Positions 38,938-64,000 of a stretch of 64,000 nucleotides of DNA are shown one piece after another (the stretch's first letter is position 1; each line of letters starts with the position of its first letter). The notes under the pieces are model-generated. The model saw only the letters and a program-made list of their open reading frames with translations. It was not told where the DNA came from and ran no database searches. Both the position numbers and the translations under genes were made by a program. This DNA comes from Adineta vaga (taxonomy: Eukaryota > Animalia > Rotifera), in the NCBI GenBank assembly GCA_021613535.1, contig CP075496.1, forward strand, positions 8,494,001-8,558,000, read 5' to 3'.

Positions 38938-41900
38938 ATGTTTGATCCATCTTTGGTCCTTCGGTTTATTATGATTGGACTTACTGCTGGTGTAATGGGA
39001 TCTGTAGTCGTGACGACTGTAATGATCATAGTAAAGACTCAAGAATTACCACCGGTTTATGAATCGAATATCTATTTAGTTCTTGATCGCCCCATTGCTG
39101 TCTATGAATTAGATTTGTTCTATGATCCACGAGCAACGTTAGAAGGTTTTATTGAAAGTCTGAACTTTGAATATAAATCATATTTTTCATTAACATGTCT
39201 TAAACTTATTGTTACTGCATTTAAGTTAAAACCAATTGTACTTGAAAAACTTCCGAGTCCTATCGAACAAATACCGAAAGATACACCATCCATTGTCGTT
39301 TTAAATGCGACGGTTTTTTTCAACCAAAGCTACACTGCTGAAGAGGTTCGAGCTGCTCTTATAAATTATACACGAATTATTGATCTTATTAATAAATATA
39401 ATGGCAAACCAAGTGGAAGATACGCGACTATAAATTTGGCAAAGTCAATCTTCAGAGCTACCAATCCTTCCAGCTTTAAAAAGAAAGACGCATTGATGCA
39501 AAAAGATGTTGAAATTAATATGTCACCGCAAGACTATGTTCTCGAAGCGATATCAGGAAGCAACGATGATTTCTATACTACTCCACCGATTCAAAAAAAA
39601 ACGTGTGACTATTTTGTTCCAGCATATATGAGCATAACGTTTGAACGTTCTTTTCCTACTACAGAAAAACGTCAATTTGCTGATCTCGCATCCACTTTAC
39701 AAGATCTTGCCACAAATGTTCAAAATCGAATTACATCAAAATTCGGTACATCATTCATTAAACTTGATATTTTACTGTTTTCTGATCAGCCAATTCTATT
39801 TCCCAATACTCAAACAGTACTGACAACCGTTGTTTGTAGGATTTATCTAACATTAAATCAACGCGCCACTTTGATAGAACAAAGTCTCAAAGACGATACA
39901 CAATCGATTACTCTGTTGGATGTTGCCAATGTCCCAAGTTCAGCTATCGCGTCATTTTCGTCCAAATACTCCATCTTTACAGACACCACTTATCAATCAC
40001 TAACGAATCAGCTAACAACTGAACTGACTAATCTTTGCTACAAAGACATGTGGACAATCTCAATGACCATTCCAACAACAATACCATCCACAACATACAC
40101 ATCCACGGAAACTACTATCACCAACAGCAAAACTACAACTAGCTCTCCTACTACTGTCATAGTCACAACTATCCCTACCACTACTACTCTTAGAACTACT
40201 ACATCCAGCACTATTACTGCTACTACTATGCCGAGCACTACAGCAACCATCACCACTACTACTCCAAGCACCACCACACCCACCACTACTACCACGGAAT
40301 CTACAACTACCACCACCACACCCACCACTACTACCACGGAATCCACCAGTACCACCACCACACCCACCACTACTACCACGGAATCTACAACTACCACCAC
40401 CACACCACACCACTACTACCACGGAATCTACCAGTACCAGTACTACCACCACCACACCAACCACTACTACCACGGAATCTACAACTTCCACCACTAGCAC
40501 CACCACACCAACCACTGCTACCACGGAATCTACAACTACCACCACTAGCACTACCACACCAACCACTACTACCACGGAATCTACCAGTACCAGTACTACC
40601 ACCACCACACCAACCACTACTACCACGGAATCTACAACTACCACCACTAGCACCACCACACCAACCACTGCTACCACGGAATCTACAACTACCACCACTA
40701 GCACTACCACACCAACCACTACTACCACGGAATCTACCAGTACCAGTACTACCACCACCACACCAACTACTACTACCACGGAATCTACCAGTACCAGTAC
40801 TACCACCACCACACCAACTACTACTACCACGGAATCTACAACTACCACCACTAGCACTACCACACCAACCACTACTACCACGGAATCTACAACTACCACC
40901 ACTAGCACTACCACACCAACCACTACTACCACGGACTCTACAACTACCACCACTAGCACTACCACACCAACCACTACTACCACGGACTCTACAACTACCA
41001 CCACTAGCACTACCACACCAACCACTACTACCACGGACTCTACAACTACCAGTACTACCACCACCACACCAACTACTACTACCACGGAATCTACAACTAC
41101 CACCACTAGCACTACCACACCAACCACTACTACCACGGACTCTACAACTACCACCACTAGCACTACCACACCAACCACTACTACCACGGACTCTACAACT
41201 ACCAGTACTACCACCACCACACCAACCACTACTACCACGGAATCCACCACTAGCACCACTACTACTACAGAATCTACCAGTACAAATGCCGTTACTAGTA
41301 TAAAATCCACTACGACGGCTGCTACACTCAGTACTACCACAAGTACTAAGACCCCCGACACAACTACTACTATAACGGTGACACGCACACCGGAAATAAC
41401 AGTATCTACAATTGCAAAAACTACAAGTACACCATTAACGCGCGTTCCTGAAACAGTTACTACAACGTCCAGATGTAATTTAAACGATCAAGTTTATGAA
41501 GCATATATGAGCATTAGTCTTTTGCTTTCCGCTACTAATGATGAAATGGCTGTATTTTCAAATATAGGTACAACAATTGAAGATATTCGAGTATCGTTAA
41601 ATGTCGAATTGAAAGTAGCATTTCCATTGTCATTTTTAAAATTTAATTACATTATGATGTCAAATCAACCGATTGTATTTTCGACTATGAAGAGTAGACG
41701 AAGAAAACGGCAGTCAGATCAAACAGCAGTGATCATTGTGATTGGTAAAGCTTACTTTACACAAAGTCAATCACGATTCGAGTTACGTACGTCCCTAAAA
41801 AATTATAAATTGGGCATAGATGTTCTAAACAAATACGGAACATCAAATACAAGACTTAGTTCTTTTTCTGCAGATCATTCTATATTCGGAGATACATCAT

Positions 41901-52269: not shown

Positions 52270-53350
52270 GTGAATTACATATGGTTTCGCATCAGCAATT
52301 TAACATTAGTTGTCAATGAAAAGTATAGAACAAACTCGGTAATGCTTATGTGTGATGCACGAAATATATACACCTACGGAGGCAATGATAATGATCAATG
52401 AAAAAGGTTCGAATATGTCGTTGACTATACGTCAATATATATATATATATGTATTGTAGTGATATTTAATCTTTCCTTTGTTCATTTGTTTATTTATTAT
52501 ACATCCCAATTATACGCATAGACTTCCTTGTCAATACGAGAGCAAACATTCTATTCAAAGAAGAAGATTGATCTTAATTTTTCGTTTCTTTTTCTTATTT
52601 AGTGAGAAAACATTTTCCTTGAAATCAAACAATGAATAATGTAGTTTGATGACAGCAGTATTTTATCATAAATGTGTTTAAATCATTGTAAGTCGATAAA
52701 ATTATCATGTACACAATCATCTTGTTGAATATTGAAATATGTATTCTGCGTAATGAACACAAAAACAAAACAAAATGAGTAATAGTTTTTCTAATTACAA
52801 ATTTATTACCTACTCAAAATCGACATGAATGACGTTAGAAACATGAACTCGTCATGTTCGTTTGTTTAGTAATATTTATATAGAAATACAATCAAGGAAA
52901 GAATACAAACGAACATCTTTCATGCTTGTTTCTACAATACTAAAATATAGTCGGTTGTTCACCTTGACTATGGTTGTGTTTGATTTAAAAGTTGATAGAA
53001 GTGTGAAATTAATGTATATTAATTAATAACGTCAGTTTCGATAGTGTGAAAGCAGTGATAAATTCAAGAATTTTTACATCGAAAAAAAAACACTCTAAAG
53101 TTTCGAATGAAAGATTAAAAGAAAGTGATACAGTGTAATGCAAAATATTATTATCATAAAATGTAAAATAGATAGAAAAAACAAACCCACGTATTCGAAT
53201 GTAAAATATTCACATGTATCAGATGGGTTCTTTGTTCAAGTTAATAAATTCAAATACAGACATAACATATCGTGAATATAATAGAATTTTTATATATATT
53301 TGTGTTTTCTTTTCGATTACACTAGAGAATACACTGAAAAATTTACAAGA

Positions 53351-53989
53351 ATGATGAAGATATTTTTTTTCCTATGTTTTCTTGCTGTCACTATTATTGC
53401 CGATGATGCTGACAATATGATCAATTCTCGAGATGGTAATGAACTATTGGTACCTGATGAAGCTATCTTGAATGGAAATGACGCAATCGATCAAAAAGAA
53501 CAAGATTTTCTAATCGTGGCAATACAATCTTCTCAAAATAATCCTGACGATCCGATTGAAGGAAACAATAATTCTGAAACGAACAACGAATCCGGTGCAG
53601 AGCCCAACAATGACAAAGGTGAGGAGAACAATAGTTCTGAAACCAAAGACGAATCTGACGTAGAACGCACGAATGATTGTGCTAATAAAGATCGTGATGA
53701 TGCAAATGAAGAAGAAAATAATTCTGAAGCAAATGATGAATCTGGTGTAGAATCCAAGAATGATGATGATCGTGCTGGCACTGATGAACCAAATAACGAA
53801 TCAGATATTGAATCGAAGAATGATAGTGAACAAAATAGTCATGATAACGCTGCTGCAGAAAGTAATAATTCTGAAACAAATAACAAATCGGACGCAGATT
53901 CAAAGACTGATGGTCAACAAACAGTCGAAGTTGAAAATACATCAGAAACTGAACTAGTTGCCGTAGATGAACCCGAAGAACCACTATAA
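53351..53989 (+). CDS. Secreted acidic, disordered N/D/E/S-rich repeat protein
   Basis: Signal peptide MMKIFFFLCFLAVTIIA and about five degenerate NNSEtNxESxxE repeats. Confidence 0.7.
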   Translation: MMKIFFFLCFLAVTIIADDADNMINSRDGNELLVPDEAILNGNDAIDQKEQDFLIVAIQSSQNNPDDPIEGNNNSETNNESGAEPNNDKGEENNSSETKDESDVERTNDCANKDRDDANEEENNSEANDESGVESKNDDDRAGTDEPNNESDIESKNDSEQNSHDNAAAESNNSETNNKSDADSKTDGQQTVEVENTSETELVAVDEPEEPL

Positions 53990-54526
53990 TGACGTATCAT
54001 TTATTCATCGATTCAATTTCAGTTTATTGTCATTTCTTGGTTGTATTCATTTATCTCAGAAATAAAAACTAACTCTCTCCGTTAAAAAGTGTATATTGCC
54101 TATAGCGACATCTATGAGCTCACATTTGTATATATTTATTAATTTTTCATTCTGATTAAAAATGTTGTTCTCCATAAAAATATAAAGATTGCATAGTCTT
54201 TCAAAATTTGTGAATGCTCATAAACGCTTTACAATGTTATTGAGAAAACTGTACAATAGAAATAGAAAATCGAAATATGATGAGTCATCATTGTTTGTCA
54301 TATGTAGTAAAACGTAACGTCTTATGTAAAAATCGTCACTTGATAGGTTTTTTCACGATAATTTTCTGGGAAAAAAACAAACAGATCAAAATTCGAATTC
54401 TTTGCAATTTTATCGAAATTTCTCGAATAAATTGAACTGTCTAAACGTCAAATCAGAGTCATTGATGAGAGAAAAATAAAATATATAAATTTTACTAATG
54501 AGATTTGTTTTATATTGTAGATTATT

Positions 54527-55474
54527 ATGGCTAAATCTGTATCTACCTTAGAATCTCTACCTAATGAAACTCTTCTTGATCTCTTCGAATATTTCGATGC
54601 TCAATCACTCTATAAATATTTTTATAATCTTAATTCTCGTTGGAATTCTCTTCTTCAATCTTTATCAAATCTGTCTCTTACTTTTCGAACATCGGATATG
54701 AATTCATTTGATCATTATCCAAAACTATTTTCTTCTCAAATCTATACTCTTATGATCTATTCTCAAGATAATATAGACCTTGATCAATTTCATAATCTTC
54801 GTAATCTTTTTATTTGGTTTCCAACTGATGAACAAATCTTTCAAATCAATACCAAATCATTTCATTCACTTATTTATCTGCATATTTCATTTACAATTCT
54901 AAAACCATCAATTTCTTCTCTCTATCAAAAAGTTTTCTCTAATGGTTTTCCTTCTTTAAAATTCTGTTATCTATGTGGATGTGAATCACCTGACGATACT
55001 CTTCAATGGACTCAATCACCAAATCTTCATTATTTACATACATCATCGAATCATGCATCTATATTAAATTCATCTCCAAATTTATCTTCTTTAATTTTAG
55101 ACATAATTATCTTAGATGGTAAATTTCTTCATTTCAAATCTCATTTGAATCTAAAACGATTAGAATTAGTCACTACGAATGTGACTTGGTTAGATGATAA
55201 AAAACAATTGAAACTCTTATTCTCATTATTACCAAATCTCGAACAATTTTCGTATCATAAAACATATTCAATTACTAATTCAATTGATATTCTTCTTCAA
55301 TATGATTGGTTAGCAAATACTTTACCATTATTGAAGCGATTTGTTTACTATCTTCATATTTTTAATTTGTTTTCAATCGATCAATCAGAATTCTATGAAC
55401 ATTATTCGAAAATTAAAGAAAATTTTTTGAAAATTTATCCTAATCAATCGAAATATTCTTTAAAAATAAAGTAA
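54527..55474 (+). CDS. F-box/LRR-like protein, array unit 1
   Basis: LESLPNETLLDLFEYF...FYNLNSRWNSLL, plus family motifs FSNGFP, WTQSP and YDWL. Confidence 0.85.
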   Translation: MAKSVSTLESLPNETLLDLFEYFDAQSLYKYFYNLNSRWNSLLQSLSNLSLTFRTSDMNSFDHYPKLFSSQIYTLMIYSQDNIDLDQFHNLRNLFIWFPTDEQIFQINTKSFHSLIYLHISFTILKPSISSLYQKVFSNGFPSLKFCYLCGCESPDDTLQWTQSPNLHYLHTSSNHASILNSSPNLSSLILDIIILDGKFLHFKSHLNLKRLELVTTNVTWLDDKKQLKLLFSLLPNLEQFSYHKTYSITNSIDILLQYDWLANTLPLLKRFVYYLHIFNLFSIDQSEFYEHYSKIKENFLKIYPNQSKYSLKIK

Positions 55475-55513
55475 AAACAATCTTCTTTTCCTTTGCTTTT
55501 TCCTTCTTCAGAT

Positions 55514-56452
55514 ATGAATACTCAGTTAGAAGATTTATCAAATGAATTACTTCTGGACATATTAGATTATATTAAAACTGAAGATTTAGTATCAAGTTTT
55601 TGGAATTTAAATCAACATTTCAATAACTTAATTCGTTCACTTAAATATTTATCTTTAATAGTAAAGAAAACAGATACATTGCCAAGTAGTTTATTTTCTC
55701 AACAAATTGTTCGAGTTGTTATTGTGACATTAATCGATATACAATTGGATTCATTTGTTAATTTACGATCATTAATATTGAACATTGCTACCGAAAATCA
55801 TATAAAACAAATTCAACCACATATTCTTCCAAAGCTTGCTTATCTTTCAATTCCAATTGTATTCGAATCTCGTGTAACAAAACAATTAGCATCTGAAATA
55901 TTCTCAAATCGATTTATATTTCTTCGTTATACAGATTTAAATCTCATCAATATACCAAATATCTTCTCCTGGTCACAGTCACCATCTCTTCATTCACTTC
56001 ATCTTTCTTCATCAAATATCAATATAATACCACTTCTACTTCAATCATGTCCTCAATTAATTCATCTACAAATTCGTATAATTGATGAACATGATTTCGA
56101 TCCAACTTCTCTATTAAATTTATCCGAACATCCATTGAGAAATTTTCTTTTTATACAATCTCAACCTTCGACATTTGTTTTCAATATCTTCCCTCTCTTT
56201 TCAATCATACCGAATGTAAAACGAATCGATTTTCGTTTATGTACACGATCATTTATCGATTTAATTCAATTAATTAGCAAATCATTTTCTCAATTGACTT
56301 GTTTCGATTGTCACATTATCGAATATCCAAATAAAGATGAACATATTGATATTCATCAAATTCGAAATATTCATTCATGTTATTCAAATATACAATGTAC
56401 ACTTCGAGAAGATTGTTTTTGTCTTTATACTACAAAACGAACCTTAATGTAA
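55514..56452 (+). CDS. F-box/LRR-like protein, array unit 2
   Basis: LEDLSNELLLDILDYI, IFSNRF, WSQSPSL. Confidence 0.85.
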   Translation: MNTQLEDLSNELLLDILDYIKTEDLVSSFWNLNQHFNNLIRSLKYLSLIVKKTDTLPSSLFSQQIVRVVIVTLIDIQLDSFVNLRSLILNIATENHIKQIQPHILPKLAYLSIPIVFESRVTKQLASEIFSNRFIFLRYTDLNLINIPNIFSWSQSPSLHSLHLSSSNINIIPLLLQSCPQLIHLQIRIIDEHDFDPTSLLNLSEHPLRNFLFIQSQPSTFVFNIFPLFSIIPNVKRIDFRLCTRSFIDLIQLISKSFSQLTCFDCHIIEYPNKDEHIDIHQIRNIHSCYSNIQCTLREDCFCLYTTKRTLM

Positions 56453-56533
56453 TAGTTGAATGTTTTATACATCTGTATGGTCTTAAAATAATACATAGTA
56501 ACAAGATTGTTTTTCTTTACCCTCTTTTTTTAG

Positions 56534-57493
56534 ATGATGAATAGATTAGAACATTTACCAAATGAATTATTAATTGAAATATTTAAATATCTCGATGCAA
56601 GAAGATTATATCGAAGTTTTTCAAATCTTAATACACGATTCAATACTCTTCTTCAATCATTGACTGACTTATGTTTAATTATATGGTCATTAAAAGATGA
56701 TGCCTATGATTATTTATTTGCTTCACGTGTTCGAACATTAGTCGTACATTTTGATGTTATTTACACATTATCACAATATATGAATGTTCGTCATTTGGTA
56801 CTTTTTCATTCCAAACATGAACAAATATCTCAAATAATGAATGAAGGTTTTCATTTAGAAACAATTTCATTAATATCACCACGATGTTTCTATACAACAT
56901 TTGGTTTTCATGAAATGATCTTTTCCAATCAATTTCCTTCTTTAAAATCATGTTATTTAACCAATGTCTATTCACCATCACTTGAAGTACGACAATTATC
57001 ATGGAGTCAATCACCATTTTTACGTTCTCTACGTATATCATCTCATGATTCACTTGTTCATGTTGCTATTTTAAATGCTTGTCCAAATTTATCTTCACTC
57101 AGTCTTTCATTATTTCAATTAGATCATACACCTTTACATATTAAACCTCATCAAAATTTGAAAAAATTACAATTTATTATGAATAATCTTCTTTGGCCAT
57201 CGGATGAAACGATTTTCGATACATTTTTCTATACCATGCCATGTTTAGAACGTTTAACTATTCAACGTTCCATTGCTCTTCCAGAAATTATCGATAAATA
57301 TTTACACTTCGATTGGCTTTCAAAAATCATCTTTCGTCATCTGTCATATCTCAAGAAATTTGGTTTCTATTTAAAATTAATCAATACGAATAAAATAGAT
57401 CGAATCGAATTGACACAAATTCTCTGTCAGATAGAAAACAATTTTGTACATAGTTTTCAAAATAACAAACATTATCGTCTTCTTATCAATTAA
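56534..57493 (+). CDS. F-box/LRR-like protein, array unit 3
   Basis: LEHLPNELLIEIFKYL, IFSNQFP, WSQSP, FDWL. Confidence 0.85.
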   Translation: MMNRLEHLPNELLIEIFKYLDARRLYRSFSNLNTRFNTLLQSLTDLCLIIWSLKDDAYDYLFASRVRTLVVHFDVIYTLSQYMNVRHLVLFHSKHEQISQIMNEGFHLETISLISPRCFYTTFGFHEMIFSNQFPSLKSCYLTNVYSPSLEVRQLSWSQSPFLRSLRISSHDSLVHVAILNACPNLSSLSLSLFQLDHTPLHIKPHQNLKKLQFIMNNLLWPSDETIFDTFFYTMPCLERLTIQRSIALPEIIDKYLHFDWLSKIIFRHLSYLKKFGFYLKLINTNKIDRIELTQILCQIENNFVHSFQNNKHYRLLIN

Positions 57494-57984
57494 GTTTAAT
57501 TCTGTGAATATCTATAATTAGTTTTGTCTTTCAAAAAAAACCAACAACAACAATAATGTTCTTGAATTCAACGAATTTATAAATAAACTATATGTTCTTC
57601 TGTTATTTGTAGATTATAAATCTATTTTGAAAAGAAAATAAATGATATCAATCGACGGTAATCATATTTAATGAATTAAATATTTATCAGGAGATTTGAC
57701 TTACCGATCACATTGATATTTATTATGTAATCGTTGAGGGTTGTTATATTACATAAGCAATGTAAGATAAGCTGAATTGTTTTTAAAATATCGTCATTAC
57801 GTTCGATGATCTATGAAAACGTCGTTTATTTCGTTTACTTGTCTGTTCTTATCATTCGAATGGGTTCAGTGATTTTTTTTCTATTATAAAAAATGATGAA
57901 TGTAATAATTTTTCAAATCATTCGAAGCATTTTGAATAGTAATGAACATTCTTGAACAGATTCTCGTTTATTTTTCTTTTCTAG

Positions 57985-58965
57985 ATGACATCGAACATCG
58001 AATGTTTACCTAACGAAATATTAATCGATGTATTCGAATATCTTGATGCTCAAAGTCTTTTTAATGCTTTCTATAAACTTAATTATCGCTTGAATAACTT
58101 GTTATATTCATTGACAAGTATTTCTCTGACAATATCAAAAAAGAATACAAATCGATTAGATCATTTTCAGGAATTCTTTGCGTTTATCAATAAATTAACA
58201 ATTGAGCCTACGATCAACATTAATTTTGATCGTTTTATCAAAATTCGATGTCTGAGTCTTACATATGTACCCAATGAAGCATTAATTCAATTGCAACATA
58301 TCGATATTTTACCTTGTCTCGAACATCTTCTCATTGTCTATCGAGTTAATCAAGTATCTACTCCTGGTTTACATCAAAAGATCTTTTCCAATGGATTTTC
58401 TAAGTTAATATCTTGTCAATTACTTGGTCTAGGAACAATGGAAACAGCTGACAATTGGACACAATCACCTTCATTACGTATTTTACATGTAAGAACTATC
58501 AATCTATTGGTTTATAAAGCAATTCTATCTGCTTGTCCTAATTTATATTTTCTTCGTCTGAATATACCGAAAGATAATCTATCATCTTTAGACGTTGAAC
58601 CACATCTAAATATCAAGCGAATGATATTAAAAATTCCTCTTCACTATTATTTGGAAACCGATGATATGATCAGTGATTTTCTTTCAATTACTCCAAATCT
58701 CGAACAATTTTGTATACAAAGATTCATTTGGGATATTGATAGTATACTGTTTTTCGTTGATTATGATTGGCTTGCAAAGATAATTCATATTCGTCTACGA
58801 TTACTTCGTCGATTTGTATTCAAATTATATTTTTCAACTTTTATAAAACGCAAAAAATCTAGTATTAAATCTATACTCAATCGAATCGATGAACATTTTA
58901 AAGAGATTCATAATAAACAATACGAATCTCGATTAATCGTTCCTCTGACAGAACTATGTTCATAA
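57985..58965 (+). CDS. F-box/LRR-like protein, array unit 4
   Basis: IECLPNEILIDVFEYL, IFSNGF, WTQSP, YDWL. Confidence 0.85.
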   Translation: MTSNIECLPNEILIDVFEYLDAQSLFNAFYKLNYRLNNLLYSLTSISLTISKKNTNRLDHFQEFFAFINKLTIEPTININFDRFIKIRCLSLTYVPNEALIQLQHIDILPCLEHLLIVYRVNQVSTPGLHQKIFSNGFSKLISCQLLGLGTMETADNWTQSPSLRILHVRTINLLVYKAILSACPNLYFLRLNIPKDNLSSLDVEPHLNIKRMILKIPLHYYLETDDMISDFLSITPNLEQFCIQRFIWDIDSILFFVDYDWLAKIIHIRLRLLRRFVFKLYFSTFIKRKKSSIKSILNRIDEHFKEIHNKQYESRLIVPLTELCS

Positions 58966-59264
58966 AGAATATTATTTTTAAGATTAATTTAATATACTAA
59001 TATTACAGTAAATTGCTTGTCTATAAATATCAAGCTTTGATGCTTTCGTTTTGACTTGATTGATATTTTTCTACTTGATTTATCGGAGTTCGGTCGATAT
59101 CGTTCGCTGAAATGAAGAGATTCGTCTCGTTTGTGACCTTTGAAGCTTTTGTAGACTAGTACACATGCATCCACACTCTAAATTGTAGATGAAGTTATAA
59201 TAAGGAAAACAATAGTAGATTTAAATATGATTTTTATTTCATTTTTAGATTATGTTACAACGAA

Positions 59265-60169
59265 ATGAAAAAACAATCATCGAAATTAGAAGATTTACCA
59301 AATGAAATTTTACTTGAATTCTTTCAATATTTTGATGCTTGTAAACTATTTCAATTATTCTATAATCTTAATTATCGTTTCAATAATCTAGTCAAATCTT
59401 TTCAACCACTTAAATTGATATTTCCCATGGAATTATCTACTAATAATCAAATCAATGATCAATATCTTTTTCCTTCTTTTACTCACACACTTATCGTTGC
59501 CCGTGCAATTAATATCAATCTCAATCGATTTCATAATATTCGTTGTCTGAAATTGGAATGTCCATTGAAAAGAGTAATAGCACAACTTAATTCTCATGTA
59601 CTACCTTATTTAGAACATCTCTTCATATCTCATCTAGGTAACAGTTAATTTCTATGATAATCTTTCGATCTAACTTCTTTTATTTTGTTTAATTAGATAC
59701 AATGACAGCAGATAATGAATGGACATCATTATGATCGTTGTGTACCTTGAGAATTTCACGTATTACTTTATTAGTTTATCAAGCAATTTTAAGAGCATGT
59801 CAAAATTTACATTCCTTTGAATTATCAATATTCAGTTCAAAAATGTCAGCTTCTTTACTTGAATATGATTGGTTAGCATACAAAATATCTCTCTATTTGT
59901 TATCATTACAACAATTTAAATTCTATTTCAAAATTATTCAAGGACAAATCTTTAATGAATCAAATATTTTATCTGAAATCAAAGAAAACTTCTCGAATTC
60001 TCATAATAATCGATATGAATCTCGATTTATACTTTTAAACTGTGAATCTTTTCTTTTCACTCTTCAAAACAGATCAACTTTACACTTGTTTAAGTATAAT
60101 TTAAAATCAATAGAATATTTTTCTTTCAGATTATCTTTAGATATGACAGTATTTCTGTCTAAAGTCTAA
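59265..60169 (+). pseudogene. F-box/LRR-like array unit 5, degenerate
   Basis: The F-box is intact, but the IFSNxFP block is missing, an in-frame TGA lies at ~59732 (WTSL*SL versus WTQSPSL), and there is an internal deletion before YDWL. Confidence 0.7.
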
Positions 60170-60338
60170 ATACCATAGTAATCACTTGTTTTTCATACAA
60201 TTTCTATTGATTACATTGTACACAAGAAAAGATTCGATGAATTTCGTCCGATGTAAATGTCAAGAAACGATTTTCACTTATCAGAAAGTAAATCAATCTA
60301 TGCATTCATTTTTCATTGATCAAATCTTTGATATTTAG

Positions 60339-61313
60339 ATCGGAAATAAACATCAATCTCGATTAGAAGATCTTCCAAATGAAATTCTAACAACTATGTT
60401 CAAATATCTCAATGCTCGTGATCTATTTCGTTCATTTCATAATCTCAACAGTCGTTTCAATCAATTAATACAATCATTTCAATATCTTCAATTAAATTTT
60501 CATATGGAAGTGCCAACAACTCTGAAAACTAATGAAGAAACATTTTCACATTATGTTTATACATTGATCGTTGACGAATGGATTGATTTCAATCCGAAAT
60601 ATTTTCCTAATGTTCGTCGTTTGAAATTGAAAAGTCCAATACCAAAAGTTCTCGAACAATTAAAAGGAAACATCATGCCTTATTTGGAATATCTTTCCGT
60701 TCTATATAAATATACAATGTATGAAACCAATCTTTTACATAATGAAATATTTTCCAATCGTTTTCCAAATTTATTTTCATGTGAATTATATGGACTAGAA
60801 GGTTTATTAACCATTCAACAATGGAAATCATCACCGGTGATACGAATTTTAAAAACTGAACAAATTAATTTAATGATTTATGAAAACATTCTTAGAACTT
60901 GTTTAAATTTATCGTTTCTCAAGTTTTCTATGCATTCATCCAATGAAAGTTCCATAGATATTTTCAAACATAAAAATTTGAAACATATGATTGTCGATAT
61001 GAAACAATTCGATTGGTCAGATGATGATAATATTTTAAGTAAATTTCTGTTCTATGTCGAAAATCTTGAACAATTGGAAATTCATCGACGAAAATATTCT
61101 CATGACATTCTCGAACGATTTCAATATTATGATTGGTTACAATCAATCATAAATCGTTGTTCACCATTCTTACGAATCTTTAAATTTTATTTTTATTTAT
61201 CCAACGATGAACATTTGAGAAAACTTATCAATGAAAATCTTCTCAAACAAATACAAAGTGATTTTCATCATGTACATAACGGACAATACGAAGCTCAACT
61301 AATAATTTGTTAA
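60339..61313 (+). CDS. F-box/LRR-like protein, array unit 6 (no ATG before the F-box)
   Basis: The frame is open from acceptor tttAG|ATC GGA: IGNKHQSRLEDLPNEILTTMFKYL. The first ATG (60396) lies inside the F-box. Confidence 0.8.
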   Translation: MGNKHQSRLEDLPNEILTTMFKYLNARDLFRSFHNLNSRFNQLIQSFQYLQLNFHMEVPTTLKTNEETFSHYVYTLIVDEWIDFNPKYFPNVRRLKLKSPIPKVLEQLKGNIMPYLEYLSVLYKYTMYETNLLHNEIFSNRFPNLFSCELYGLEGLLTIQQWKSSPVIRILKTEQINLMIYENILRTCLNLSFLKFSMHSSNESSIDIFKHKNLKHMIVDMKQFDWSDDDNILSKFLFYVENLEQLEIHRRKYSHDILERFQYYDWLQSIINRCSPFLRIFKFYFYLSNDEHLRKLINENLLKQIQSDFHHVHNGQYEAQLIIC

Positions 61314-61456
61314 AATTCGATAAAATTGACGTTTTCTGGAAAGTGTTATTTTGAATAAATATATACAGACCATGATTTCGATCGTTTTTTTTTGTTTTGT
61401 ATATATACATAAGAATTTTAACAGAATTTCTTATATATTTTAGATCAGTTGTACAT

Positions 61457-62416
61457 ATGACTAATCAAGTATTCCTATTAGAATTGTTACCTAATGAACT
61501 ATTGATCGAATTATTCAAGTATTTTCAAACTCAAGATCTTTTTCAAGCTTTTTATAATCTTAATTTTCGATTGAATCATCTGATTCATTCATTAACACAT
61601 TTGATCTATTCGACAAATCAACAAAATGATCGTATTCAATCCTATCCATATATTCGTACATTAATTATCGATACACATATTCATCCTCAACTTATTTGCT
61701 TTCCAAATATTCGTCGTCTTAGTATTGATTATGTTACTGATGGTTTTATTTCACAATTCAATGGACATGTTTTCCCTTTTCTAGAATTTCTATCAGTCGA
61801 TCATAAAATTCATCCATTCTATATGTCTGATTTACGTGCAAGGATTTTTTCGAATACATTTCCTAATTTGAAATATTGTTCCATATCTCGAATGAGATCA
61901 CCATGTATAAATCAAGAATGGACACAATCATTATCTTTACGATATTTAAAATTTAATGAAATCGATTCAATAATTTATACGTCTATTCTTACAGCATGTC
62001 CAAATTTATCCGTTGTGAAATTTAAATTACCAACCAGATCAAAAATTCAAACAAATTTCATTAAACATATTCATTTGAAGCGATTAATTATCAATATGAA
62101 TTACGATGAATATCCATGGGATGATAGTATTTTAGAAAGTTATTTATTATGTGTACCGAATCTTGAACAGTTGAAAATATCTCGATCAGTATCGTCAATA
62201 AATTCGAATATAATGCAACAGTTACAATGTTATGATTGGCTTTTATCAATTATTTCTAGTCATTTATCAAAACTTGATCGACTTAAGTTTGATTTATGTG
62301 TTCGCCGGTCTCAGGAATTAATTGAATTGAATTTTCAAGACATTTGTAGTCAATTGAAAAGACAGTTTTATCATGTTTATAAAAATCGATATGAAAGTCG
62401 ATTGGTTGTTTTTTGA
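61457..62416 (+). CDS. F-box/LRR-like protein, array unit 7
   Basis: LELLPNELLIELFKYF, IFSNTFP, WTQS, YDWL, RYESRL. Confidence 0.85.
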   Translation: MTNQVFLLELLPNELLIELFKYFQTQDLFQAFYNLNFRLNHLIHSLTHLIYSTNQQNDRIQSYPYIRTLIIDTHIHPQLICFPNIRRLSIDYVTDGFISQFNGHVFPFLEFLSVDHKIHPFYMSDLRARIFSNTFPNLKYCSISRMRSPCINQEWTQSLSLRYLKFNEIDSIIYTSILTACPNLSVVKFKLPTRSKIQTNFIKHIHLKRLIINMNYDEYPWDDSILESYLLCVPNLEQLKISRSVSSINSNIMQQLQCYDWLLSIISSHLSKLDRLKFDLCVRRSQELIELNFQDICSQLKRQFYHVYKNRYESRLVVF

Positions 62417-62715
62417 GAATTTTATTTCAATTCGTTTTTCTTGTAAATACGTTCGTTTTTATAACATTGAATAGTTTTAGTAGTTTTGTAAATTTGAATA
62501 AATAAAATAATCACTGCAATAAGATCTTACCGTGAAATCAAGAGAGATACGATCACAACATTCTCTAATGACATCTGTAGATATTTTCATGTTACTGTTG
62601 GATTATACTATGCACCATTCATAAATTGACTTGACAGTAGACAAGCACTCACTGGGCACACACACATATTGCTATTTTTCGCACGCAATATAAAAATAGA
62701 TTTCTTTTTATTCAG

Positions 62716-63312
62716 ATGTTTCCATTACTTCGTCGTTTCATATCGATACCAAAACAATCGATTCGTTCATTTCATTCATTCGATGAAATAACACCTGCAA
62801 AATATATCTCAACTCGTCTTCAAAATGGTATCGGTTCTCGATATGTTTGTCAATTACAACGTTTAACGATTCAAATATGTAAAGAATTTCGTTCATCCTA
62901 TGGTACTCGAGAATGGATTGCTAATGATTTAACTGCATTTGCTCGTCAACATCCATATGTAGTTATATATGTTCAGCCACGTCGTCATCGAGCACCAAAT
63001 TTAATTGGAGAATATTTGAGTGGTGATCGTCAATGGATTCCTCTTTCAAATTGTGATCGACATCATGTTAATTGGTGGATACATACTCTCTTAACACAAC
63101 AAGGTGATCCACAATGGCGATTATTAAAACAAATGCATACTGATTCCCCTTCAACTCAAGGTGTATGGACACCATTCACAAATAAATCCATTGATCGAAC
63201 ATTGAGAACATATCCTGATCAAGATCTTATTGAAATGGAATATCCACAAATGACAGCAACACAGCAAATCAAAGAATTATTTGAACAACAGAAACTAGAT
63301 AAAACTACATAA
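62716..63312 (+). CDS. MRPL43: Mitochondrial ribosomal protein L43 (mL43)
   Basis: LQNGIGSRYVCQLQRLTIQICK...SYGTREWI...FARQHPYVVIYVQPRRHRAPNLIGEYLSG and HTDSPSTQGVWTPF. Confidence 0.9.
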   Translation: MFPLLRRFISIPKQSIRSFHSFDEITPAKYISTRLQNGIGSRYVCQLQRLTIQICKEFRSSYGTREWIANDLTAFARQHPYVVIYVQPRRHRAPNLIGEYLSGDRQWIPLSNCDRHHVNWWIHTLLTQQGDPQWRLLKQMHTDSPSTQGVWTPFTNKSIDRTLRTYPDQDLIEMEYPQMTATQQIKELFEQQKLDKTT

Positions 63313-63421
63313 ATTTTGATACATTTTTTTTGTAGAATCATTCAGTTAACATATGAGCGTGTTTACTAGATTGATTTCTAATGTTATTAAAGAAAATGTT
63401 TTTCGTTTTTTCTTTTTTTAG

Positions 63422-64000
63422 ATTTATGAAATTATCGAAGATAAACATGGTCTTCATGTAATCAACTCATCTCTTGTCTGTAGACATTACATACCATGTT
63501 TTCCACTAAAGATTTCAACAGATCCATAATCAATGCCACTATTCTATCCAACTATTTTTCAACATAGTTTTCGTCGACTTGTTCAACGATGTACTTCAAT
63601 TGATTTTCGTCAATCTTTTACCACTCTATGTTTATTTTTTCTTCTTTCTTTTCTTACTTCAATCATTGTTAATCTTCTAATACCATTTATCGTTATTAAA
63701 CCTTCAACACCGTCAATCTCATCATCATCATCACTTAGTCTACTCTCATCCGGTCATGTTTTCTTTCCACCGGGTGTAACATCGTTACAATGTTCATCAC
63801 CAAAACGACATGAATTACAAGCACATCATCATCATCATCCTCAACACGAATCGTTGAATATAAAACGAAAATATACTAAAGATCAAACGAAACAAAAGAA
63901 CGTGTCCAGTGGTAAGTGTTCGCTCAATGTTCTTCAACTATGTCATTCAACGAAAGAATTCGAATCTTTTTCATGTAGATCTTCGACAAGAAGCAGAAAC
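63422..64000 (+). CDS. Partial unidentified gene (possible TM, Ser/His-rich), frameshifted, runs off the window
   Basis: Acceptor at ~63421, coding-like stretch ...LLIPFIVIKPSTPSISSSSS...HHHHPQH, donor G|GTAAG at ~63912 and acceptor at ~63979. Confidence 0.4.

What the first reader, a model, noticed from the sequence alone, without database searches (positions are those of the whole stretch)
54500..63430. Seven-unit F-box/LRR cassette array in which every unit has its own splice acceptor and some have no room for a promoter: an operon or an exon-choice system
Seen: seven divergent, same-strand, single-exon paralogues. Each is preceded by a pyrimidine tract and AG 0-16 nt before the reading frame (AG ends at 54520, 55511, 56533, 57984, 59248, 60338, 61443), and each exon begins 'AT'. 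MRPL43 (ttcAG|ATG, 62715) continues the pattern. Unit 1 stop and unit 2 acceptor are only ~36 nt apart, almost all polypyrimidine, with AATAAA (55465-55470) inside unit 1's last codons. Unit 2 to unit 3 is ~80 nt. Known: spliced-leader trans-splicing occurs in bdelloid rotifers, and F-box proteins are SCF substrate adaptors. Inference: either a polycistron resolved by SL trans-splicing, or mutually exclusive terminal exons spliced to one shared leader, giving a diversified ubiquitin-ligase receptor repertoire that could be defensive.
Basis: partly seen in the sequence, partly recalled or inferred. Interest (0 to 1): 0.8.

Follow-up and report, generated by a model that had tools for sequence, protein, structure and literature searches.

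The report
Rotifer F-box genes in spliced-leader operon
Seven tandem F-box/LRR genes of the bdelloid rotifer Adineta vaga are separate genes, not an exon-choice system; RNA data show the rotifer spliced leader on two units, and where RNA data could test it each messenger ends exactly where the next one starts, a sea-squirt-type operon layout that the papers I could search do not report for rotifers.

Summary
The sequence observation holds. Seven same-strand F-box/LRR paralogues each sit behind a pyrimidine tract plus AG at the stated coordinates. Two corrections apply: unit 5 has a 59-nt intron and is decayed, and unit 6 has a private 5' exon.

RNA contigs from two studies show four things:
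- The rotifer spliced-leader tail is joined at the acceptors of units 2 and 5.
- Poly(A) tails start exactly at AG 55511 (end of unit 1, start of unit 2) and at AG 57612 (end of unit 3).
- An RNA joins unit 2's 3'UTR to unit 3's ATG.
- The unit 6 acceptor is an ordinary cis acceptor.

The leader comes from at least 42 SL RNA genes elsewhere in the genome, so the operon alternative is supported at units 1-3. The shared-exon (exon-choice) alternative is rejected. A defensive role is untested; dN/dS is 0.22-0.33.

This is the Ciona / C. elegans SL1-type operon without intercistronic DNA. The accessible literature lists rotifer operons as not determined. This scan has already noted the same layout at seven other places in this genome, including another F-box array. 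A single promoter, and the leader on units 3 and 7, were not shown.

The parts
54519..55512 (+). Unit 1 mRNA: acceptor AG 54519-54520, CDS 54527-55474, AATAAA 55465-55470, poly(A) added at 55511/55512
   Evidence: X1 contig covers 54519-55512 with 1 letter before it and 12 A behind 55512..
55510..56534 (+). Unit 2 mRNA: SL acceptor AG 55510-55511, CDS 55514-56452, 3' end at or near 56533/56534
   Evidence: loose end CTTACCAAG before 55510 equals the last 11 nt of the SL once the AG is included. X1 contig 56207-56534 runs unspliced up to the U3 acceptor and carries 5 further letters that the tool did not list.
56475..56533 (+). 59-nt GT..AG intron that joins the U2 3'UTR (22 nt after its stop) to the first codon of U3
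   Evidence: table 5: joint 56474>56534 in X2, X3 and X4. Contigs span 55510/55579-56474 and 56534-57418/57540.
56534..57613 (+). Unit 3: CDS 56534-57493, AATAAA 57582-57587, poly(A) at AG 57611-57612 (+A 57613)
   Evidence: 14 A behind 57613 in X1. The TTTGTAG|AT site is conserved in L016 and L017.
57613..57984 (+). Transcribed spacer; probably an alternative long 5'UTR or outron of unit 4, running from the distal acceptor 57612 to the proximal acceptor 57984
   Evidence: contigs 57611-57867 (4 letters before), 57615-57807 and 57705-57927.
57983..59205 (+). Unit 4: acceptor AG 57983-57984, CDS 57985-58965, 3'UTR to at least 59205
   Evidence: contigs of all four runs start at 57983; three listed records (X1, X2, X4) show 4 extra letters before it. 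Pfam F-box-like 25.1 bits. AF2 model and Foldseek.
59247..60129 (+). Unit 5, a decayed copy: SL acceptor AG 59247-59248, ATG 59265, intron 59638-59696, in-frame TGA 59732-59734, about 60 residues missing, transcript end near AG 60128-60129
   Evidence: CTTACCAAG before 59247; joint 59634>59694 (cut +3) in 4 runs; 59733 G>C in X3; X1 contig ends at 60128..
60130..61313 (+). Unit 6: private exon 1 (seen from about 60196, ATG 60237, ends 60287), intron 60288-60338, exon 2 60339-61313. Possible SL acceptor at 60129 (inferred).
   Evidence: joint 60287>60339 GT..AG in X3 and X4, and X2 loose end ATCAGAAA; the orthologue in L017 has ATG right behind the acceptor, whereas the window has lost it.
61442..62416 (+). 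Unit 7: acceptor AG 61442-61443, CDS 61457-62416
   Evidence: The acceptor is kept in the L017 orthologue. There are no RNA data, because this unit lies outside the stretch laid.
62714..63421 (+). MRPL43-like gene (acceptor AG 62714-62715, CDS 62716-63312), followed by the next acceptor AG 63420-63421 with ATTAAA 30 nt upstream
   Evidence: The junction is conserved in L017.

Best explanation
The seven units are separate genes of a large bdelloid F-box/LRR family, presumably substrate receptors of SCF ubiquitin ligases. They are not cassettes of one gene.

Shown: for units 2 and 5, the mRNA 5' end is made by trans-splicing of the 23-nt rotifer spliced leader onto the pyrimidine-tract/AG in front of the unit. 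[quoted passage not shown] No intercistronic DNA is left, as in Ciona operons and C. elegans SL1-type operons.

Inferred: transcription must cross each such boundary, so U1-U2-U3 form one polycistronic transcription unit. U3-U4 (through the distal acceptor 57612) and U5-U6 (through AG 60129) probably do too.

Also shown: U6 lost its ancestral start codon and now uses the old acceptor in cis, from a new upstream exon that carries the ATG. U5 is a decayed copy that is still trans-spliced and cis-spliced.

Not shown: one promoter for the whole array, and the leader on U3 and U7.
For: -: SL tail CTTACCAAG+AG at 55510/11 and 59247/48 (chance of a 9-nt match is about 4e-6 each). Poly(A) sits directly behind 55512 and 57613.
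- joint 56474>56534 in three runs. An unspliced contig reaches 56534 in a run of a second study. Contigs of all four runs start at 57983.
- the published SL occurs 42 times in this genome, each followed by GT; none is in the window or within several Mb of it.
- Ciona and C. elegans SL1-type operons show the same '...AG + poly(A)' boundary.
- the sister array on contig 1 has 8 units with stop-to-ATG gaps of 84-126 nt at five of its seven junctions. Each has a Y-tract+AG|AT, and a poly(A) signal lies 24-36 nt upstream at three of them.
- the acceptor/poly(A) sites are kept in other bdelloids at dS of about 0.8. In L021 the stop-to-acceptor distance is only 18 nt.
- F-box plus LRR fold.
Against: - No contig bridges the U1/U2 boundary, and contigs cannot show the level of an RNA.
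- The U2-U3 RNA is a cis-spliced dicistronic form, not an unprocessed precursor. It comes from one study only and could be read-through noise.
- Spacers U4-U5 (283 nt), U7-MRPL43 (299 nt) and 57613-57984 leave room for internal promoters.
- In the related contig L017, the orthologues of U5-U7 lie 1.2-3 kb apart, so tight packing of the distal half is not conserved.
- No transcription start site was mapped.
Confidence: 0.7

Rival explanations
1. The array is an ordinary tandem gene family. Each unit has its own promoter, lying inside or just after the preceding unit. The SL merely trims each outron, and the RNAs that cross boundaries are read-through noise.
For: - About 60% of bdelloid mRNAs carry the SL whether or not they are in an operon (PMC4824033).
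- Spacers of 283-491 nt exist at U3-U4, U4-U5 and U7-MRPL43.
- U6 has a private 5' exon.
- The distal units are far apart in L017.
Against: - At U1/U2, poly(A) and the SL acceptor share one AG, 37 nt after the stop. The U2 outron, with its branch point, must therefore lie inside the U1 transcript.
- The same holds at 57612 and probably at 56533.
- An RNA joining U2 to U3 exists in three runs.
- The decayed U5 is still expressed and processed.
Confidence: 0.2
2. The array is an exon-choice system. The units are mutually exclusive terminal exons, each spliced to one shared genomic leader exon upstream of 54520.
For: Each unit has an acceptor, and unit 6 lacks an ATG behind its acceptor.
Against: - The letters joined at 55511 and 59248 are the SL, which is encoded by at least 42 SL RNA genes elsewhere.
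- The U6 upstream exon is private and lies 51 nt away.
- Six units have their own start codon directly behind the acceptor.
- Unit-specific poly(A) tails were seen.
- No joint to a common exon appears in table 5 or table 7.
Confidence: 0.02
3. The poly(A)-at-acceptor coincidence arises because the upstream 3' end is produced by the trans-splicing reaction itself: the released outron ends in AG-OH, is debranched, and is then polyadenylated. On this view, independent cleavage by the polyadenylation machinery is not involved.
For: - The last templated letters are ...AG or ...AGA at both tails seen.
- The same puzzle is left open for Ciona (PMC1488885).
Against: AATAAA or close variants lie 24-41 nt upstream of the AG at most tight junctions. 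This fits ordinary cleavage, as in C. elegans SL1-type operons. No branched intermediate was observed.
Confidence: 0.15

Closest known systems
Ciona intestinalis SL-resolved operons without intercistronic DNA (Satou et al. 2006, PMC1488885)
   Same: A single SL serves both monocistronic and operon genes. The upstream mRNA ends '...AG' plus poly(A), exactly at the downstream trans-splice acceptor. The genes lie on the same strand and are directly juxtaposed.
   Different: Most Ciona operons lack AATAAA within 40 nt of the boundary, whereas here a signal lies 24-41 nt upstream. The Ciona operons analysed in that paper are not described as runs of paralogues, whereas here the cistrons are paralogues. 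The phylum differs (Rotifera), with an unrelated SL.
C. elegans SL1-type operons (cited in PMC7986045 and PMC1488885)
   Same: The poly(A) site is adjacent to the trans-splice site, a canonical AATAAA is present, and resolution uses the general SL rather than a dedicated SL2.
   Different: This is a rare class in the worm. Here, and at seven other places noted by this scan in the same genome, it may be the usual form. That generality was not tested here.
FBXL-type F-box/LRR substrate receptors (SKP2, FBXL2, FBXL17, COI1, TIR1)
   Same: An N-terminal F-box is followed by an LRR solenoid. These proteins are the best structural matches (Foldseek E 1e-5 to 1e-3).
   Different: Sequence identity is 10-16% and TM-scores are only 0.36-0.48. 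The family was found only in bdelloid genomes or unnamed environmental contigs in the word search. Skp1 binding is untested.
Expanded F-box families of C. elegans, proposed as an innate-defence repertoire (from my own knowledge, not checked here)
   Same: A large, fast-evolving, tandemly arrayed F-box family: at least 107 matches in this genome.
   Different: Gene-wide dN/dS here is 0.22-0.33, with no excess in the LRR part over 1. No evidence links the family to defence.

Membership tests
SL-resolved operon, Ciona / SL1 type | Same-strand genes directly juxtaposed | tested here: met
   Stop-to-acceptor distance is 37 nt (U1/U2), 81 nt (U2/U3) and 119 nt (U3/57612).
SL-resolved operon, Ciona / SL1 type | Downstream cistrons carry the spliced leader at the boundary acceptor | tested here: met
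   Met for U2 and U5 (SL tail). Consistent for U4 (contigs start at the AG). Not shown for U3. The U6 acceptor 60338 is cis.
SL-resolved operon, Ciona / SL1 type | The upstream mRNA 3' end coincides with the downstream acceptor | tested here: met
   Poly(A) lies behind 55512 and 57613. A contig ends at 56534.
SL-resolved operon, Ciona / SL1 type | An RNA molecule spans two cistrons | tested here: inconclusive
   A U2-U3 joined RNA appears in three runs of one study, but it is cis-spliced. None was seen across U1/U2. These are contigs, not single molecules.
SL-resolved operon, Ciona / SL1 type | One promoter upstream and none between cistrons | not testable with these tools
   No start-site data are available. 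Read laying was limited to one call on contigs.
F-box/LRR (FBXL-like) SCF receptor | F-box motif | tested here: met
   PF12937 scores 25.8 bits (U3) and 25.1 bits (U4) against a cut-off of 24.3. U1, U2, U5 and U7 score 13-17 bits; the U6 piece from its internal ATG gave none. LPNE(I/L)L..(I/L)F is conserved in alignment A1.
F-box/LRR (FBXL-like) SCF receptor | LRR solenoid after the F-box | tested here: met
   The AF2 model shows alternating strand and helix. Foldseek top hits are COI1, FBXL2, SKP2 and TIR1.
F-box/LRR (FBXL-like) SCF receptor | Binds Skp1 and recruits substrates | not testable with these tools
   This needs biochemistry.
Alternative-cassette (exon-choice) locus | Cassettes joined to shared genomic constant exon(s) | tested here: not met
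   The leader is the SL from SL RNA genes elsewhere. The units have their own stops, and poly(A) ends were seen for U1 and U3. No common exon joint was found.

The most novel reading that the evidence does not exclude
In bdelloid rotifers the boundary AG may be a single bifunctional processing site. [quoted passage not shown] One cut would then serve two messengers along the whole array. This would answer the question left open for Ciona operons in 2006.
Probability: 0.15. Interest if true: 0.8.

Novelty: new member of a known kind. Interest (0 to 1): 0.55.

Why it matters
Operons resolved by a spliced leader are known in nematodes, tunicates, flatworms, chaetognaths and kinetoplastids. For rotifers, a 2008 survey lists them as not determined (PMC2481426), and I found no later paper that describes them.

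This locus gives direct RNA evidence that a bdelloid uses the intercistron-less operon type. In this type the poly(A) site and the leader acceptor are one and the same AG. That adds an independent lineage for asking two questions: how such boundaries are resolved, and whether the upstream and downstream messengers exclude each other.

The locus also shows how a gene family can expand inside an operon. A decayed copy stays expressed, and a former leader acceptor has been re-used as an ordinary intron acceptor after loss of a start codon.

For annotation, it warns that A. vaga gene boundaries should be set by acceptor and poly(A) sites.

Tried and rejected
- The look-up of encoding contigs with the exact proteins of U7, MRPL43 and U1 found nothing. 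The leader on U7 and MRPL43 therefore could not be checked.
- Two Logan contigs with tightly packed units gave gene tables but no DNA.
- The 2005 paper that first described the rotifer SL is not held. What I say about it beyond the SL sequence comes from citing papers or from memory.
- Five literature searches for rotifer operons found none.
- The 'AT after AG' feature is only mildly enriched among strong acceptors in the window (18 of 82 against a 12% background). I treat it as part of the acceptor context, not as a code.
- Exon choice was rejected, as set out under rival explanations.
- Gene-wide positive selection was rejected, since dN/dS is 0.22-0.33. Site-wise tests were not run.
- The spliced proteins of U5 and U6 were built only inside a script for the tree (with X at the U5 stop).
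Full report
**What is there**

The window is G000:C4:8494001-8558000 of a 100.8-Mb, six-contig assembly. The published rotifer leader and a syntenic Rotaria locus fit a bdelloid.

Between 54500 and 62416 lie seven + strand paralogues of about 320 codons:
- U1: 54527-55474
- U2: 55514-56452
- U3: 56534-57493
- U4: 57985-58965
- U5: from 59265
- U6: to 61313
- U7: 61457-62416

An MRPL43-like gene follows at 62716-63312 (Pfam PF05047).

Pfam finds the F-box above its cut-off in U3 and U4 and below it in U1, U2, U5 and U7; the U6 piece searched, which starts at an internal ATG, gave no F-box hit. A 28-row family alignment conserves LPNE(I/L)L..(I/L)F and LRR-like blocks. An AF2 model of U4 (pLDDT 84.6) is a helix/strand solenoid. 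Its best PDB matches are COI1, FBXL2, SKP2, TIR1, D3/MAX2 and FBXL17. 'F-box/LRR' therefore stands.

A strict acceptor motif occurs only 43 times on this strand of the window, and it coincides with four unit starts plus 62715 and 63421.

**RNA evidence**

One stretch, 54450-60449, was laid on Logan contigs of four runs from two studies. The runs behave as RNA: GT..AG introns are removed, poly(A) tails are present, and some intergenic bins have no depth.

(a) At 55510 and at 59247 a contig continues upstream with CTTACCAAG. Together with the genomic AG, this is the last 11 nt of the rotifer leader GGCTTATTACAACTTACCAAGAG (PMC3795323). That leader occurs 42 times in this genome, always followed by GT (for example L012:1501). 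None lies in the window or within several Mb of it. U2 and U5 are therefore trans-spliced.

(b) The U1 contig runs 54519-55512 and then carries 12 A. The U3 contig ends at 57613 and then carries 14 A. Both tails begin at a pyrimidine-tract AG (55511 and 57612). The first of these is the U2 leader acceptor. A contig starting at 57611 with four extra letters suggests that the second is an acceptor too. The U2 contig of the same run ends at 56534, at the U3 acceptor, with five letters that the tool did not list.

(c) In the three runs of the other study, 56474 is joined to 56534 (59-nt GT..AG intron). One RNA therefore contains the U2 coding region, 22 nt of its 3'UTR, and U3 from its ATG.

(d) Contigs of all four runs start at 57983, at the AG of U4; three listed records show four extra letters before it.

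(e) The intron 59638-59696 of U5 is removed in all four runs.

(f) 60287 is joined to 60339. Reading back from this joint, an ATG at 60237 opens the U6 frame.

**Reading**

The boundary '...AG + poly(A)', which is at the same time the leader acceptor of the next gene, is what Satou et al. described for Ciona operons. It also characterises the rare SL1-type operons of C. elegans (PMC1488885; PMC7986045). [quoted passage not shown]

I therefore read U1-U2-U3 as cistrons of one transcription unit. U3-U4 (through 57612) and U5-U6 are probable extensions of it. For U5-U6, a strong acceptor lies at 60129 and the U5 contig ends at 60128.

Poly(A) signals sit 24-41 nt upstream of the AG at the tight junctions, which is closer to the C. 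elegans SL1 type than to Ciona. This holds for U1/U2, U2/U3, U3/57612 and MRPL43/next, and for three of the tight junctions of the sister array.

What is not shown:
- a single promoter;
- a molecule across U1/U2;
- the leader on U1, U3 and U7.

**Comparative support**

- **Sister array.** A second array on contig 1 (4676877-4686000, minus strand) has eight intact units. Stop-to-ATG gaps are 84, 126, 388, 99, 101, 89 and 574 nt. Each unit lies behind a Y-tract AG|AT.
- **Other bdelloids.** Environmental contigs L016 and L017 carry orthologues of U3, U4, U6 and U7, followed by MRPL43, a membrane protein and a Fic gene. At dS of about 0.8, the U3 poly(A)/acceptor site and the MRPL43/next-gene acceptor are conserved blocks.
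- **Tightest junction.** L021, from another lineage, has only 18 nt between a stop and the next acceptor.
- **Rotaria.** The syntenic place holds a single F-box gene behind TTGTAG|AT. The array therefore probably expanded in the Adineta line, although the tree is too deep to date the expansion.
- **Against a single seven-gene operon.** In L017 the orthologues of U5-U7 lie 1.2-3 kb apart.

**Unit details**

- **U5** is decayed. It has a TGA at 59732 (one run reads TCA instead), lacks about 60 residues, and has lost the usual stop. It is nevertheless leader-spliced, which is easy to understand if it rides on a neighbour's transcription.
- **U6** lost the start codon that its L017 orthologue keeps directly behind the acceptor (ATTATG versus ATCGGA). 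It now uses that acceptor in cis, from a new exon.

**Selection and family size**

dN/dS against orthologues is 0.22-0.33 for four units, compared with 0.07 for MRPL43 at the same dS. The F-box part is equal to or slower than the remainder. This is fast evolution under purifying selection.

The genome holds at least 107 profile matches, about 30 of them full-length. A defensive role is speculation.

**Literature and earlier scan notes**

Rotifer operons are listed as 'ND' in PMC2481426. A 2025 paper lists nematodes, tunicates and rotifers together as lineages in which trans-splicing and operonic transcription evolved independently, without giving rotifer operon data. Five searches found no description.

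This scan has already reported the same layout at seven other loci of this genome, one of them an F-box array. Those notes agree with mine but are not independent evidence.

**Limits**

Only contigs, not reads, could be laid, and only once. U7 and MRPL43 lay outside the stretch. The spliced U5 and U6 proteins were used only in a local script and were not searched in any database.

Noticed in passing
window 60237-60339 vs L017:8150-8200: Unit 6 lost the start codon that its orthologue keeps right behind the acceptor. It gained a 51-nt intron and a new ATG-bearing exon, so a former leader acceptor has been re-used as a cis acceptor.
   Followed up: yes
window 59732-59734: The in-frame TGA of unit 5 reads TCA in one RNA run (59733 G>C). 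The stop may therefore be allelic or strain-specific. The internal deletion of about 60 residues remains either way.
   Followed up: partly
window 40267-41261: Twenty copies of a 51-nt repeat rich in ACC/ACT codons (Thr/Pro/Ser, mucin-like). They explain the GC-rich, strongly skewed block at 40-42 kb.
   Followed up: partly
window 53300-53989: A + strand ORF just upstream of unit 1 has a hydrophobic N-terminus and a long Asn/Asp/Glu/Ser-rich body. It has no Pfam match. Whether it belongs to the same transcription unit is unknown.
   Followed up: no
G000 contigs 1, 2, 5 and 6: Many of the 42 SL RNA genes lie in head-to-head pairs about 155 nt apart, on opposite strands. There are clusters on contig 5 near 9.88-9.93 Mb and 10.91-10.93 Mb.
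   Followed up: no
window 58005, 55064, 55606, 57094 (table 7): Some contigs leave the stretch at these points and continue into unlike sequence. One example reads ...ATGAATACTTTGGAAGA before 58005, which looks like the N-terminus of a paralogue. These are probably paralogue or allele chimeras of the assembler.
   Followed up: no
G000:C1 array, spacer between its third and fourth units: The 388-nt spacer holds a decayed F-box start (ATGGAATCTTTACCTAATGAAATTCTA...) right behind a CCAG acceptor. It is a remnant of a further unit.
   Followed up: no
window 63421-64000; L017:13700-15345: After MRPL43 come a small membrane protein and, in L017 and Rotaria, a TPR-Fic (FICD-like) gene. F-box array, then MRPL43 or Yip1, then Fic is a synteny block shared among bdelloids.
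   Followed up: partly
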